Assembly: GCF_006345805.1 (NCBI RefSeq)
Contig: NW_021825430.1
Coordinates: 1-15,569, forward strand
Length of the DNA stretch: 15,569 bases
Direction of reading: 5' to 3'
From: Octopus sinensis
Lineage: Eukaryota
Below are positions 8,036 to 11,726 of this stretch, in pieces. The position numbers and the translations under genes were made by a program. Each line of letters begins with the position of its first letter. Within the stretch, counting starts at the first letter, position 1. The notes under the pieces were generated by a model, which did no database searches, had not been told where the DNA came from, and saw only the letters and a list, made by a program, of their open reading frames with translations.

Positions 8036-9243
8036 CTTTTATCCGCCAATAAATCATCTATATGTTCATCATTTTCTTTGAACCAATCCTGATGCTTTCT
8101 TTGTATCAATCCCAGAACTTTCTTGCCTATATCATAAACTGACTTTTAAGGGTCGGCCAATCCACCCCAATATCTGCAGCATTCATTTCCTCTCGTAAAG
8201 TTCTCTTCACACTATTATACCTAAGACGATCAACATTCAGTCTTTTAGGCAGGGTAATCTCTGCAGCTCGGAGTTTACGTTTTGTGACTAATTTCACTTT
8301 TGCACGTACTAGGCGGTGGTCAGTCCCACACTCAGCTCCACGAAGAACACGAACACACTGCACATCCTGTCTGTCACGCACCCTAACTAGGATGTAATCC
8401 AGAATATGCCATTCGTTAGATGCAGGGTGCATCCATGTAGTCTTAAGCTTATTCTTTTGTTGAAACATAGTATTGGTAACACACAGACTCAGCTCCTCAC
8501 ACATCTGCAGCAAAAGCATGCCATTACTATTACACTTCCCCACCCCATGCTTTCCAATCACAGTCCATGTGTTAAAATCCCTACCAACTCTAGCATTAAA
8601 GTCACCCAGTACGATGACTTTGTCTGCCCGAGGGATATTTCTTATAATGCCCTTCAAAGCATGGTAGAAAGAAAATCTTTTCGTCATCAGTATAGCACAT
8701 AGTTGGAGCATACACACTCGCCAAGGTCATATAATTTTCTCTAGCCAAAGGAATTCTCATGGACATAAGACGCTCGTTAATTCCGATTGGGAATTCTTCC
8801 AACTTGTCCACAAGAGTAGTCTTAACGGCAAATGCCACTCCAGCTTCTCCTCTAAACTCTTCATTCCTCCCTTTCCAAAAGAATGTATATTTTCCACAAG
8901 ATTCTGTAAGATGACCACCTCCAGGTAATCTCGTCTCAGATAAAGCAACGACGTCACGATCATAGCGTTGAAGCTCCTTCGCAACAAGCGCAGTCCTTCT
9001 TTCAGGACATTCGGAGGACTTGCGGTCAAGCAGTATCCGTACATTCCAACAGCCAATATTCACTATTTTCTTCGGTTCTGTCACAGTAGCATGATGACGG
9101 CCGGGTTCAGACTCTGATGCTCTGGAGCCCCTGCCGGGCCAGACTCTTTCAGCTGATGTGATTCCAGAGTCCTTACTGCCATTTATTTTTATACTGTTTT
9201 GGTACATCATTGATTTTTGCTTTTTAAGGCAACAGCCAGCCAT
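8036..9243 (-). pseudogene. LINE ORF segment A: N-terminus, APE endonuclease and start of linker, with two 1-nt frameshifts
   Basis: Track ORFs 8602..9243 and 8127..8717 join across a frameshift near 8672-8681 (DEK|..SFYHALK). A second frameshift near 8144-8147 leads to a frame not in the track: SVYDIGKKVLGLIQRKHQDWFKENDEHIDDLLADKR(H), running to ~8036/8032 (translated by hand). Confidence 0.92.
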
Positions 9244-9866
9244 TCATTTGAGACTCACAGCACTATCAACAATCATGAATTAGTTAATCAATTTAATCAA
9301 TCCAATGTAGTTATCGTGCAATGCCTGTGCAAAAAGATTTTTTTAAGTGAGGAAAGGCTGTTCACTGAGTCAATCCCACTCACTAAGCAACAGCAGCCAT
9401 AATCCGAAAAGAAGAACAAGTCAACATTATCGGTAACCACTGAGCCGCAGGTTTTATGTCGGTGTTATCCCAGTTACCTGAGTTACCTTCTCCTAGAAGG
9501 ATGCCCTAACAAAGGCTATGAGTCCTTCACTCCCAATGGTTTAACCGCGCGATCGGGTATTCAGTCCGATTATTTCTGTGTTCCCGCGCATCATACAGCC
9601 TTAAGCCTTAAAAAAAAATTACTCATTTATTGGATGGCCGTTGACTCTCAAAAGATCCTCCGCCCTTTGACGGGTTTTGCTTTTCATCCCGCAGGGTGTC
9701 CAATAAACCAAGCAAGCTTGGTGGGGTTGCCGGTTTAGTCGCCGACGACCCGACCATGCAACAGGTTGCACTGGGTTACATGTTACCAGTAGCACTCGAA
9801 AGTGACCTGACATAAGGTTGCACTGGGTTACATGTTACCAGTAGCACCCGAAAGTGACCTGATATA
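9244..9866 (-). promoter_or_regulatory. 5'UTR (~620 nt) of the RTE LINE, rich in hairpins
   Basis: It lies directly upstream of the ATG at 9243 on the minus strand, is more GC-rich than the host flanks, and has several short inverted repeats (see findings). Internal promoter function is inferred from LINE biology, not shown. Confidence 0.75.
9763..9866. repeat. Two 52-bp tandem copies at the LINE 5' terminus
   Basis: 9763-9814 AGGTTGCACTGGGTTACATGTTACCAGTAGCACTCGAAAGTGACCTGACATA versus 9815-9866, which has 2 substitutions (CACTCG/CACCCG, GACATA/GATATA). Confidence 0.97.
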
Positions 9867-10430
9867 CAGGACCACCATTACTGCATCTCTCCAGTCCTCA
9901 GGTACAGATTCACTAGTCCATATCTTACCAAACAAAGAGTGAAGTTTCTGCAGAAGTTTCTTACCACCATGCTGTAACAACTCCGCATGTATGCCATCCA
10001 TACCCGTAGACTTCCCATTATTCAACATTGAGACAGCCATTGCAACTTCTTCCAACTTTGGTTGTTCCGCGAGTGCTGCCTTCACAGGCAATCCAGGGAT
10101 GAGATTGAGAACATCCTCACTAACTACAGACTGCTGATTCAAAAGTTCATCAAAGTGTTCTTGCCACCTTCGCAGAATTCCTTGTGAATCATGAAGTTCT
10201 TTACTATCCCAGCTTCGAAGTGGTGTCATCAGGGACGACGTCGGTCCATAAATTTCTCGCAAGAGACCATACAACAGCTTTGTGTTATTGGAATCTGATG
10301 CCGCATGTATCTTATCACCCTTGGTACTCCACCACGCATCCCTCATCTGAGAGAGCTTTTGTCTCACACATGATTTTACATCCTTGAGTTCCCTATGCAA
10401 CACTTCCTTTTCCTGTGACTTTGCTGACAA
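9863..10430 (-). pseudogene. LINE ORF segment B: linker/tether and RT N-terminal subdomains, inverted
   Basis: Track ORF 9828..10430 is LINE-like up to ...VPEDWRDAVMVVLY, then reads into the 5'UTR repeat (IRSLSGATGNM), which marks the junction at ~9863-9866. Confidence 0.93.
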
Positions 10431-11676
10431 ATATCAGGCGACTTGCTGCAAAAACAAAGATATTTACCTCTATCATAAGAGACCTTTTGTATGCAGATGA
10501 TTGTGAGCTAGTAGCACACACAGAGATTGATATGCAACACATTTTGAATGCATTCTCTGATGCTTGCACTGCCTTAGGATTGACAGTCAATCTCAAGAAA
10601 ACTGTTGTCATGCCTCAACCTGCCCCTGGTAAGCAGTATAGTGTACCAAATATCTATGTGAATGGTAAACGACTTGATGTAGTTGATCAGTTTGTCTACC
10701 TGGGAAGCACTATTAATAGATATGGCAATGTGGATGATGAAATTCCATTTAGAATTAGGAAAGAAAGTGTTGCTTTCGGAAGGCTAGAAAAGCGCCTCTG
10801 GAGTCGGCGAGACATACGCAGAAAGACAAAGATAAAGGTGTACAAGGCATGTGTGCTCCCTTCTCTTCTCTATGCCTGCGAGACGTGGGTCACATATCGA
10901 TACCACCTTAAACAACCGGAACGTTTCCATCAGATGTGCCTCAGACGGATCTATGGCATTAAGTGGAAGGACCGCATCAGTGATCTTGAAATATTGGAAG
11001 GCTCTCGGTGTGAAAGTATAGAAGCTCTTGTGTTAAAGCAAAGGCTCAGATGGAGTAGTCATCAGGTCAGAATGAAGGATTCAAGGATGCCAAAACAACT
11101 CTTTTATGGAGAGTTAGCTAAAGGAGAACGACCTCCACATAAACCAAAAAAGAGGTATAAGGACTTACTGAAGGCTTCCTTAAGAGATGCTTGCATCTCT
11201 CCTGACACATGGGAAGGCATAGCTATTGGTCGTAGCAGGTGGAGAAGGATTGTGCATGAGGGGACAGCCACTTTTGAGAAATCTCGAGTTGCACATGAGA
11301 AAGTAAGGAGGGATGTCAGGAAGGGCATCGCTGTTACACTTCCAGAAGGGAAGGGTCTTCCTTTGATTCTGACATGCAATGTCTGTGCCTCAGTAAAGCT
11401 GGACTCATGAGTCATCTTCGTAGTCATAAAACGAGACAGATGAGTGACAACCTGGCCACTGGTGGTGGTGTAGCACACCATACTAATCATATCTGTCGGG
11501 CATGTGGAAGAGAGTGTAATTCGGCAGGAGGACTTAAACGACATACAAAGGTACAAGAAGCCCAGTTACAACTACAGCCGGCTATTACCAGTAAAGGTTT
11601 TAGTTGTCAATTTTGTACAAGACATTGTAGATCTTTAGCTGGGCTAAAAAGTCACATTCGATCACAGCACCAGTAA
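10424..11676 (+). pseudogene. LINE ORF segment C: RT from just before YADD, thumb/C-terminal domain and three C2H2 fingers, with one frameshift
   Basis: Track ORF 10415..11410 (LTNIRRL...LLYADDC; YADD at 10490-10501) continues after an inferred ~10-nt deletion near 11386 into ORF 11374..11676, stop TAA at 11674-11676. Confidence 0.93.
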
Positions 11677-11726
11677 CGGTTAAGCTTCGTGCAATGGCCA
11701 TACTCGATAACGAGGGGACAGCCATA
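11677..11726 (+). other. LINE 3'UTR with terminal stem-loop
   Basis: ATGGCCATACTCGATAACGAGGGGACAGCCATA contains the hairpin CTCG-ATAA-CGAG inside an outer TGGC/GCCA pairing, then runs into (TATG)n. Confidence 0.8.

What the first reader, a model, noticed from the sequence alone, without database searches (positions are those of the whole stretch)
8036..11726. RTE LINE with two consecutive in-place inversions (A-inverted, B-inverted, C), suggesting twin priming plus re-priming
Seen: left to right the DNA is revcomp(5'UTR+endonuclease), revcomp(linker+RT start), then forward RT end+3'UTR. Segment A ends at ...LLADKR(H) and segment B begins (L)SAKSQEK...MRDAWW. Established: in RTE ORFs these lie only a few codons apart, whereas B's end (VMVVLY) and C's start (LTNIRRL, just before YADD) are separated by the RT core motifs NYRGISL, QCGFR, DLxKAFD and QG, roughly 0.5 kb by estimate. 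Those motifs are absent here. Twin priming gives a single 5' inversion, often with a deletion, and is known mainly from mammalian L1. Inference: the top-strand primer annealed inside the RNA, copied to the RNA 5' end, re-primed further 3' on the same RNA, stopped almost exactly where the first cDNA had started, and was then joined to the bottom-strand cDNA. A double serial inversion in an invertebrate RTE element would be unusual; two independent insertions would not be expected to abut in protein coordinates.
Basis: partly seen in the sequence, partly recalled or inferred. Interest (0 to 1): 0.85.

Follow-up and report, generated by a model that had tools for sequence, protein, structure and literature searches.

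The report
Doubly inverted octopus RTE retrotransposon copy
One dead copy of an octopus RTE-type jumping gene carries its first two segments each flipped in place and lacks 0.54 kb of its reverse-transcriptase core, a scar best explained by an insertion primed from both DNA strands with one extra template switch, which has so far been described only for human L1 elements.

Summary
Window 8032-11728 is one near-complete RTE-clade LINE (endonuclease, RT, three C2H2 fingers, (TATG)n tail).

Mapped on two colinear relatives, it reads left to right:
- rc(5'UTR + endonuclease + linker start), 8032-9862
- rc(linker + RT start), 9863-10430
- forward RT end + zinc fingers + 3'UTR, 10430-11728

About 542 nt (178 codons, the RT core) is absent from the whole window. 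The A end and the B start lie 0-6 codons apart. All three segments are about equally distant from a related copy (61-65% nt).

- A's end shares ATGT with the flanking (TATG)n, the likely top-strand primer.
- The A 5' tip joins B with no filler.
- That tip (TCAGG) recurs at the first codons of C, giving a perfect 8-bp inverted repeat around B.

Best reading (about 0.55): twin priming, then re-priming of the same cDNA on the same RNA, halted where the first cDNA began. Assembly error and later DNA rearrangement cannot be excluded without reads.

The pattern is not unprecedented: a 2024 preprint reports 'twin priming & switching' in 20 of about 3,600 tumour L1 insertions. Finding it in an invertebrate RTE is new but rests on one copy. 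Interest is moderate.

The parts
7920..8035 (+). Left-flank (TATG)n microsatellite, in the same orientation as the element's own tail. Presumed target and top-strand primer.
   Evidence: Sequence read directly. Same repeat unit as the tail at 11729-11870.
8032..8035 (.). Junction J1: ATGT is shared by the microsatellite and by the end of segment A (sense ...AG-A CAT), a 4-nt microhomology.
   Evidence: L002 and P0001 both have H (CAT) after the R codon. The tblastx HSP with L002 runs on to 8026.
8032..9243 (-). Segment A, coding part: ORF start (ATG 9243), APE-type endonuclease and start of the linker (...DWFKENDEHIDDLLADKRH). Two frameshifts, near 8626-8672 and 8139-8145.
   Evidence: Pfam Exo_endo_phos / Exo_endo_phos_2. 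P0391 aa 29-398. 86-88% aa identity to the uniref O. bimaculoides fragment P0271 and the unlabelled metaclust fragment P0272.
9244..9862 (-). Segment A, 5' leader (about 620 nt) ending in two 52-nt tandem monomers (9752-9803 and 9804-9855). The tip TCAGGTCAC is a monomer start.
   Evidence: Repeat family D19. Sense-strand reading. The length matches the ~600-nt UTR of RTE-2_OV and the >=550 nt of L001. No Pfam hit above cut-off and no Rfam or tRNA hit.
9858..9865 (.). Junction J2 (9862|9863, no filler) and the left arm CCTGATAT of a perfect 8-bp inverted repeat.
9863..10430 (-). Segment B: linker and N-terminal RT extension (LSAKSQEK...MRDAWW...DWRDAVMVVLY). Open frame, no disruptions.
   Evidence: P0391 aa 420-596. 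L002 nt 718-1287. 6,633 homologues at E<=0.001, with alignments ending at B aa 189-192.
10431..10438 (.). Right arm ATATCAGG of the 8-bp inverted repeat, which forms codons (A)AT ATC AGG of C. J3 lies at 10430 with a 1-nt overlap.
10430..11676 (+). Segment C: RT from just before YADD to the end, then three C2H2 zinc fingers. One frameshift near 11383-11392. Stop codon at 11674-11676.
   Evidence: RVT_1 profile 150-204 and zf-C2H2 hits. P0391 aa 775-1183. The conserved FNIRR motif shows that homology starts at the N codon at 10430.
11677..11728 (+). Short 3'UTR.
   Evidence: 79-86% identical to the 3' end of L002.
11729..11870 (+). (TATG)n tail of the element.
   Evidence: The independent copy L002 ends in the same repeat directly after the same 3'UTR.

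Best explanation
This is a single retrotransposition event of an octopus RTE-clade LINE into a (TATG)n microsatellite, in which both strands of the target primed reverse transcription.

Shown: the order, orientation and limits of A, B and C; the missing 542 nt; the junction sequences.

Inferred steps:
(1) The nicked bottom strand, (CATA)n, paired with the RNA's (UAUG)n tail and copied C.
(2) The top-strand 3' end (...TATGT) paired with ACAU at the end of A (position p1) and copied the RNA to its 5' tip. This gave a cDNA ending ...GTGACCTGA-3'.
(3) That 3' end re-annealed on the identical UCAGG at the first codons of C (AAUAUCAGG).
(4) The RT core was skipped. Either the template already lacked it, or the enzyme slipped between AUA at the C start and UAUA at the B end.
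(5) The same cDNA then copied B until it ran into the primer/RNA duplex at p1. This is why the B start abuts the A end.
(6) The two cDNA ends were joined, giving flank | rc(A) | rc(B) | C | tail.

The copy has no RT core and carries three frameshifts, so it is inert.
For: - Segment map on two colinear references.
- A/B abutment of 0-18 nt.
- Equal divergence of A, B and C from L002.
- Disruptions proportional to length: 2, 0 and 1 in 1.2, 0.57 and 1.25 kb.
- Both flanks are (TATG)n in one orientation, and L002 proves that this repeat is the family's own tail.
- J1 has a 4-nt overlap with the microsatellite. J2 has no filler, with A's tip at a monomer start. J3 has a 1-nt overlap.
- A perfect 8-bp inverted repeat sits within 0-3 nt of both ends of B. 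My rough post hoc estimate of the chance is about 1%.
- The leader length fits published full-length octopus RTE.
- The same class of product is reported for L1.
- Blocking of a cDNA at the internal primer is the standard explanation of twin-priming junctions.
Against: - Only one copy was seen, in one assembly, and no reads were available.
- No family consensus could be built, so the true 5' terminus and the exact p1, p2 and p3 positions rest on relatives at 65% nt identity (L002) or on a short gene model with its own deletions (P0001).
- Target-site duplications cannot be read because both flanks are the same microsatellite.
- The loss of the RT core needs an extra assumption: a deleted template or a second slip.
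- The 8-bp repeat was found post hoc. In random pairs of windows, matches of >=8 nt occur in about 8% of pairs when position is ignored.
- 5' inversions were absent or nearly absent for non-L1 LINEs in cell assays.
Confidence: 0.55

Rival explanations
1. Two steps. Canonical twin priming produced flank | rc(A) | B-(RT core deleted)-C. Segment B was later flipped at the DNA level between the 8-bp inverted repeats CCTGATAT and ATATCAGG, for example by replication template switching.
For: Flipping B back in silico gives ...GTC CTG TAT ATC AGG CGA (VLYIRRL), which is in frame, and a textbook twin-priming product whose inverted part ends where the direct part begins.
Against: Eight base pairs is very short for a DNA inversion. 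Part of the left arm (TAT) is itself B sequence, so only 5 nt of the inverted repeat would have existed before the event. It needs an additional independent event inside a 0.6-kb stretch.
Confidence: 0.1
2. Post-integration DNA rearrangement. A normal full-length forward insertion was broken at four points (5' boundary, p1, p2, p3). A and B were each re-ligated inverted, and the RT core was lost.
For: Such a rearrangement yields the same order and orientation, and exact sharing of p1 by two joins is natural for a DNA break.
Against: It needs four breaks within 2.9 kb, one of them within a few nt of the element's 5' end. No inverted flank, (CATA)n, is attached to A's tip. Nothing else in the window looks rearranged.
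Confidence: 0.12
3. Assembly or library artefact: mis-oriented small contigs, or chimeric reads from amplified DNA.
For: In-place flips of adjacent pieces with abutting ends are what mis-oriented contigs produce. The element is a multi-copy repeat flanked by microsatellites.
Against: The window has no N. It runs through many perfect microsatellite runs of 32-80 bp within arrays of 100 to about 700 bp, which suggests long-read data. The junctions share only 0-4 nt, not assembler-sized overlaps. The junction sequences make mechanistic sense.
Confidence: 0.12
4. Independent insertions that happen to lie side by side: a minus-strand copy later truncated at its 3' end, next to a separate 5'-inverted copy.
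For: RTE copies are abundant in octopus genomes, and microsatellites may be shared targets.
Against: The A end and B start coincide within 0-18 nt of a ~4.2-kb element, which has about a 1% chance. There is no tail or flank between the pieces. Divergence is equal. The 3' truncation of A has no TPRT explanation.
Confidence: 0.03

Closest known systems
'Twin priming & 5' switching' L1 insertions in human tumours (bioRxiv 10.1101/2024.08.27.596794)
   Same: A 5' inversion plus a second inverted piece at the inversion breakpoint. It is explained by transfer of the internally primed cDNA to a not-yet-copied part of the same RNA. It is rare, at 20 of about 3,600 insertions.
   Different: Those are human L1, somatic, and usually strongly 5' truncated. 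Here the element is an RTE-clade LINE of an octopus in an assembled genome. The first leg reaches the 5' leader, so the copy is near full length. The switch appears guided by a 5-8-nt identity between the RNA 5' tip and an internal site. I could not see their figure, so the exact geometry of their class is read from text only.
Canonical twin priming of L1 (Ostertag & Kazazian 2001, as cited)
   Same: The tail-proximal part is forward and the 5' part is inverted and attached to the 5' flank. There is a short microhomology at the internal priming site. A cDNA stops where the internal primer sits.
   Different: Canonical twin priming gives one inversion only. Here the inverted part's 3' end (p1) abuts the next inverted piece, not the forward piece. 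Published cell assays found 5' inversions almost only with L1 in human cells.
Octopus RTE elements (RTE-2_OV of O. vulgaris; RTE of O. bimaculoides; PMC9115989)
   Same: A single ORF with endonuclease, RT and C2H2 zinc finger, a leader of about 600 nt, and a microsatellite directly after the ORF. EN fragments of O. bimaculoides are 86-88% identical.
   Different: The reconstructed ORF here would be about 1,185 codons against 1,109. This copy is rearranged and broken.
End-to-end template jumping of non-LTR reverse transcriptases
   Same: The RT continues on a new template after reaching the 5' end of the first.
   Different: The classical jump lands on a free 3' end of another molecule. Here the landing is internal, on the same RNA, at a short identity.

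Membership tests
RTE-clade non-LTR retrotransposon | Single long ORF with an N-terminal APE-type endonuclease followed by RT | tested here: met
   Exo_endo_phos and RVT_1 hits. A, B and C map colinearly onto the single ORFs of P0391 and P0124.
RTE-clade non-LTR retrotransposon | No separate ORF1/gag-like gene and no RNase H domain | tested here: met
   The 620-nt leader holds only 61-64-aa ORFs with no Pfam hit above cut-off. There is no RNase H hit in C or in the full-length relatives P0124 and P0151.
RTE-clade non-LTR retrotransposon | Very short 3'UTR ending in a simple-repeat tail instead of poly(A) | tested here: met
   A 52-nt UTR is followed by (TATG)n. The same UTR and tail occur in the independent copy L002.
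RTE-clade non-LTR retrotransposon | RT groups with RTE/BovB in a phylogeny | not tested
   No reference set was at hand. Indirect evidence: many EN relatives are named 'craniofacial development protein 2-like'. From my own knowledge, not checked here, that label marks BovB/RTE-derived endonuclease domains. The published octopus element with the same architecture was placed in RTE.
Canonical twin-priming insertion | Forward 3' part with tail, inverted 5' part next to the 5' flank | tested here: met
   C + tail at 10430-11870 (+). rc(A) starts at the left flank at 8036.
Canonical twin-priming insertion | The 3' end of the inverted part lies next to the 5' end of the forward part on the element map (small deletion or duplication) | tested here: not met
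   The A end (P0391 aa 398) and the C start (aa 775) are about 1.1 kb apart. The abutment is with the second inverted piece, B, instead.
Canonical twin-priming insertion | Target-site duplication flanking the whole insert | tested here: inconclusive
   Both flanks are (TATG)n, so no unique duplication can be read.
Twin priming with template switching (L1, 2024 preprint) | A second inverted segment sits at the inversion breakpoint and derives from RNA between the internal primer and the tail-primed cDNA | tested here: met
   rc(B) lies between rc(A) and C and maps between them on the element. Definition taken.
Twin priming with template switching (L1, 2024 preprint) | All pieces come from one RNA molecule in one event | not testable with these tools
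   Equal divergence and abutment are consistent with this. Proof needs the empty site, reads and a family consensus.

The most novel reading that the evidence does not exclude
Top-strand (twin) priming followed by intramolecular re-priming is a native property of RTE-clade enzymes in a mollusc germ line, not a peculiarity of L1 in human cells. The (TATG)n target/tail system supplies the long top-strand overhang needed for it. The re-priming is steered by a short identity between the RNA's 5' monomer start and an internal coding site. On this view, such doubly inverted copies should recur with the same J2 sequence elsewhere in the genome.
Probability: 0.4. Interest if true: 0.55.

Novelty: new member of a known kind. 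Interest (0 to 1): 0.4.

Why it matters
5' inversions are the main sequence evidence that both strands of a target can prime LINE reverse transcription. Published evidence is almost entirely from mammalian L1, and cell assays suggested that the phenomenon depends on L1 and on human host factors.

A well-resolved example in an RTE element of an octopus would widen that picture. It includes the rarer 'extra switch' variant and junctions that can be read base by base. It would also give a concrete, countable signature to survey in cephalopod genomes, where RTE activity is under discussion.

As it stands this is one inert copy. It has no bearing on host function.

Tried and rejected
- The word-indexed protein search with B gave one hit only. 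The exhaustive search was needed to get full-length relatives.
- Exact look-ups of the B ORF, P0001 and P0271 found no contigs.
- A metagenome scan with P0001 found nothing. No second copy of the same family could therefore be fetched and no consensus built.
- The leader of L001 shows no similarity to the window's leader, so the true 5' end could not be verified by homology.
- Rfam and tRNA scans of the whole window were empty.
- P0001 looked at first like a clean ruler for p1 (35 vs 34 residues). It has its own deletions relative to L002, so I give a range of 0-6 codons.
- My first parse of J3 (C starting at 10424, with a 4-nt CTGA overlap) was rejected. About 45 homologues and L002 showed a conserved F-N-I-R-R, with the window's 'aca' codon not matching F.
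- Inverted or direct repeats between J1 and J2 and between J1 and J3 are at chance level.
- Per-segment identity to distant full-length proteins (40-55%) cannot discriminate subfamilies. The nt comparison with L002 was used instead.
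Full report
WHAT IS THERE

The window looks like animal DNA: long microsatellites, SINE-like repeats and no N.

Between 8032 and 11728 lies one LINE copy with these open reading frames:
- Minus strand, 8602-9243 and 8127-8717: both hit the endonuclease families Exo_endo_phos and Exo_endo_phos_2.
- Minus strand, 9828-10430: a 200-codon frame, LSAKSQEK...MRDAWW...VMVVLY.
- Plus strand, 10415-11410: this matches only positions 150-204 of the 205-position RVT_1 profile, that is from YADD onward.
- Plus strand, 11374-11676: three C2H2 zinc fingers.

Both flanks are (TATG)n on the plus strand, at 7920-8035 and 11729-11870.

WHICH FAMILY

- The endonuclease is 86% identical to P0271, which uniref labels Octopus bimaculoides, and 88% to P0272, an unlabelled metaclust entry. 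Many more distant hits are named 'craniofacial development protein 2-like'. From my own knowledge, that label marks BovB/RTE-derived endonucleases.
- The published octopus RTE-2_OV has the same build: one ORF with endonuclease, RT and a C2H2 finger, UTRs of about 600 nt, and a microsatellite right after the ORF.
- An exhaustive search with segment B found 6,633 relatives, among them full-length proteins.
- The closest full-length relative is P0391, 1190 aa, on the 4,223-nt contig L001 with a leader of at least 550 nt.
- No ORF1-like or RNase H domain is present.
- I did not place the RT in a phylogeny.

MAP ON COLINEAR REFERENCES

On P0391:

| Segment | P0391 aa | Window | Strand |
|---|---|---|---|
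| A | 29-398 | 9138..8035 | minus |
| B | 420-596 | 10391..9864 | minus |
| C | 775-1183 | 10424..11664 | plus |

Residues 597-774 have no counterpart anywhere in the window. On P0124 these residues are RVT_1 positions 5 to about 150.

A second and closer reference came from hit P0108. Its contig L002 (3,198 nt) carries endonuclease end, linker, RT, zinc fingers, 3'UTR and (TATG)n, all on one strand. Its last 117 nt are 86% identical to window 11683-11800. The right-hand (TATG)n is therefore the element's own tail.

The tblastx map on L002:

| L002 nt | Window | Strand |
|---|---|---|
| 53-708 | 8681..8026 | minus |
| 718-1287 | 10430..9864 | minus |
| 1288-1829 (542 nt) | absent | n/a |
| 1830-2732 | 10430..11332 | plus |

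HOW CLOSE ARE THE A END AND THE B START

- A ends AAA AGA (CAT). On L002 this corresponds to CGG 697-699 and CAT 700-702.
- B starts TTG TCA GCA, which corresponds to L002 nt 718.
- That leaves 15-18 nt unaccounted on L002.
- The octopus gene model P0001 runs colinearly across this point. It is 85% identical to the A tail and 69-76% identical to B. It is 5 codons shorter than L002 exactly here, which would make the abutment exact. P0001 has other deletions, however.
- I therefore give a range of 0-6 codons.
- For two independent breakpoints on a 4.2-kb element, the chance of this is about 1% or less.

ONE SOURCE OR SEVERAL

- Global nt identity to L002 is 64.5% for A, 60.6% for B and 64.5% for C.
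- The same full-length protein is the best or near-best match for all three segments.
- Reading-frame disruptions number 2, 0 and 1 in 1.2, 0.57 and 1.25 kb, which is proportional to length.
- Nothing points to different subfamilies or ages, although resolution is limited without a consensus.

JUNCTIONS

- J1: the plus strand reads ...TATGTATGT|CTTTTATCC. The bases ATGT (8032-8035) belong both to the microsatellite and to A's last codons (A of AGA, then CAT). This is a 4-nt microhomology between a (TATG)n top-strand end and the RNA.
- J2: in sense the sequence reads ...GTC CTG TAT A|TCAGGTCACTTTCGGG. There is no filler. TCAGGTCAC is the start of a 52-nt monomer that is present twice at the tip of the leader. 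The leader is 622 nt long, as expected for a full-length RNA.
- J3: about 45 homologues and L002 have F-N-I-R-R here. The window has T-N-I-R-R, and its 'aca' codon is unrelated to F. C therefore starts at AAT (10430) and B's first codon TTG ends there, a 1-nt overlap.
CCTGATAT (9858-9865) spans J2, and ATATCAGG (10431-10438) forms the first codons of C.
  - Matches of this length occur in about 8% of random window pairs.
  - A match lying within 0-3 nt of both breakpoints is, by my rough post hoc estimate, a 1% event.

MECHANISM (INFERRED)

The top strand of the final DNA runs flank, rc(A), rc(B), C. Antisense A and B can only have been copied from RNA by a primer on the top strand, with A made first and B second.

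The sequence details suggest this course:
1. The top-strand (TATG)n end pairs with ACAU at p1.
2. The cDNA reaches the RNA's 5' tip and ends ...CCTGA-3'.
3. This end pairs with the identical UCAGG at the start of C.
4. The RT core is skipped. Either the template lacked it (flipping B back gives an in-frame VLY-IRR join), or the enzyme slipped between AUA and UAUA.
5. B is copied until the enzyme meets the duplex at p1. In ordinary twin priming the same block stops the tail-primed cDNA.
6. The tail-primed cDNA supplies C.

RIVALS

- A later DNA flip of B between the 8-bp repeats on top of a canonical twin-priming product.
- A four-break DNA rearrangement.
- An assembly or amplification artefact.
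- Independent insertions.

Each is weighed in its own section of this report. None can be excluded without reads, an empty site or a consensus. The last is unlikely because of the abutment.

COMPARISON WITH THE LITERATURE

- In cell assays, 5' inversions were seen almost only for L1 in human cells, with one Nimb-2_DR case and none for ZfL2-1.
- My searches found no report of twin priming for RTE elements.
- The double pattern itself has been described. A 2024 preprint reports 20 tumour L1 insertions with an internal inversion at the twin-priming breakpoint and proposes 'twin priming & 5' switching'.
- Large long-read surveys class insertions with several internal breakpoints as non-canonical.
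- The finding is therefore a new instance, in a new clade and host, of a recently described rare product.

LIMITS

- No copy of the same family could be fetched.
- The true 5' end, the target duplication and read support are untested.
- The microhomology arguments are post hoc and partly rest on a relative at 65% nt identity.

Noticed in passing
window 9858-9865 and 10431-10438: A perfect 8-bp inverted repeat (CCTGATAT / ATATCAGG) brackets segment B. The left arm spans the A/B junction and the right arm forms the first codons of C. In the RNA these would be a direct repeat between the 5' tip and an internal site.
   Followed up: partly
window 9752-9803 and 9804-9855: A 52-nt tandem duplication (88% identical) lies at the very tip of the element's leader, reminiscent of monomer repeats in LINE promoters. 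The junction with B falls exactly at a monomer start.
   Followed up: partly
window 7441-7906, about 12230-12526, and 15215-15568 (cut by the window end); fragment at 1699-1731: Several copies (80-85% identical) of a roughly 470-nt SINE-like repeat with an internal (CA)n. All lie in one orientation, and one copy sits on each side of the LINE. ARAGORN and Rfam report nothing there.
   Followed up: no
window 11374-11676: Three C2H2 zinc fingers at the C-terminus of the RTE ORF, now out of frame by one shift near 11383-11392. The same fingers occur in P0391, P0003 and L002, so this is a widespread RTE sub-lineage. The octopus paper calls the finger rare in RTE elements.
   Followed up: partly
L002 (ENA ERZ2272728 NODE_450), 1-3198: A colinear but frameshifted copy of a related element in an anonymous low-coverage assembly. 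It is only about 65% identical in the coding part but 79-86% identical in the 3'UTR, with the same (TATG)n tail. This suggests the 3' end is the conserved recognition module.
   Followed up: partly
P0001 (UniParc UPI00078A2365): This 145-aa gene model spans the A/B boundary colinearly. It lacks 81 residues of B (aa 54-134) and several linker codons. It is probably a spliced-around or decayed copy, so it is an imperfect ruler.
   Followed up: partly
window 7920-8035: The left microsatellite is not pure. It contains two copies of the near-palindrome GTCTAGACATA spaced about 38 nt apart within (TATG)n.
   Followed up: no
window 3400-4110: Very long (TAGA)n/(CAGA)n arrays with perfect 80-bp runs. 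Together with the many (TA)n, (CA)n and (TATG)n tracts, this argues for a long-read assembly.
   Followed up: no
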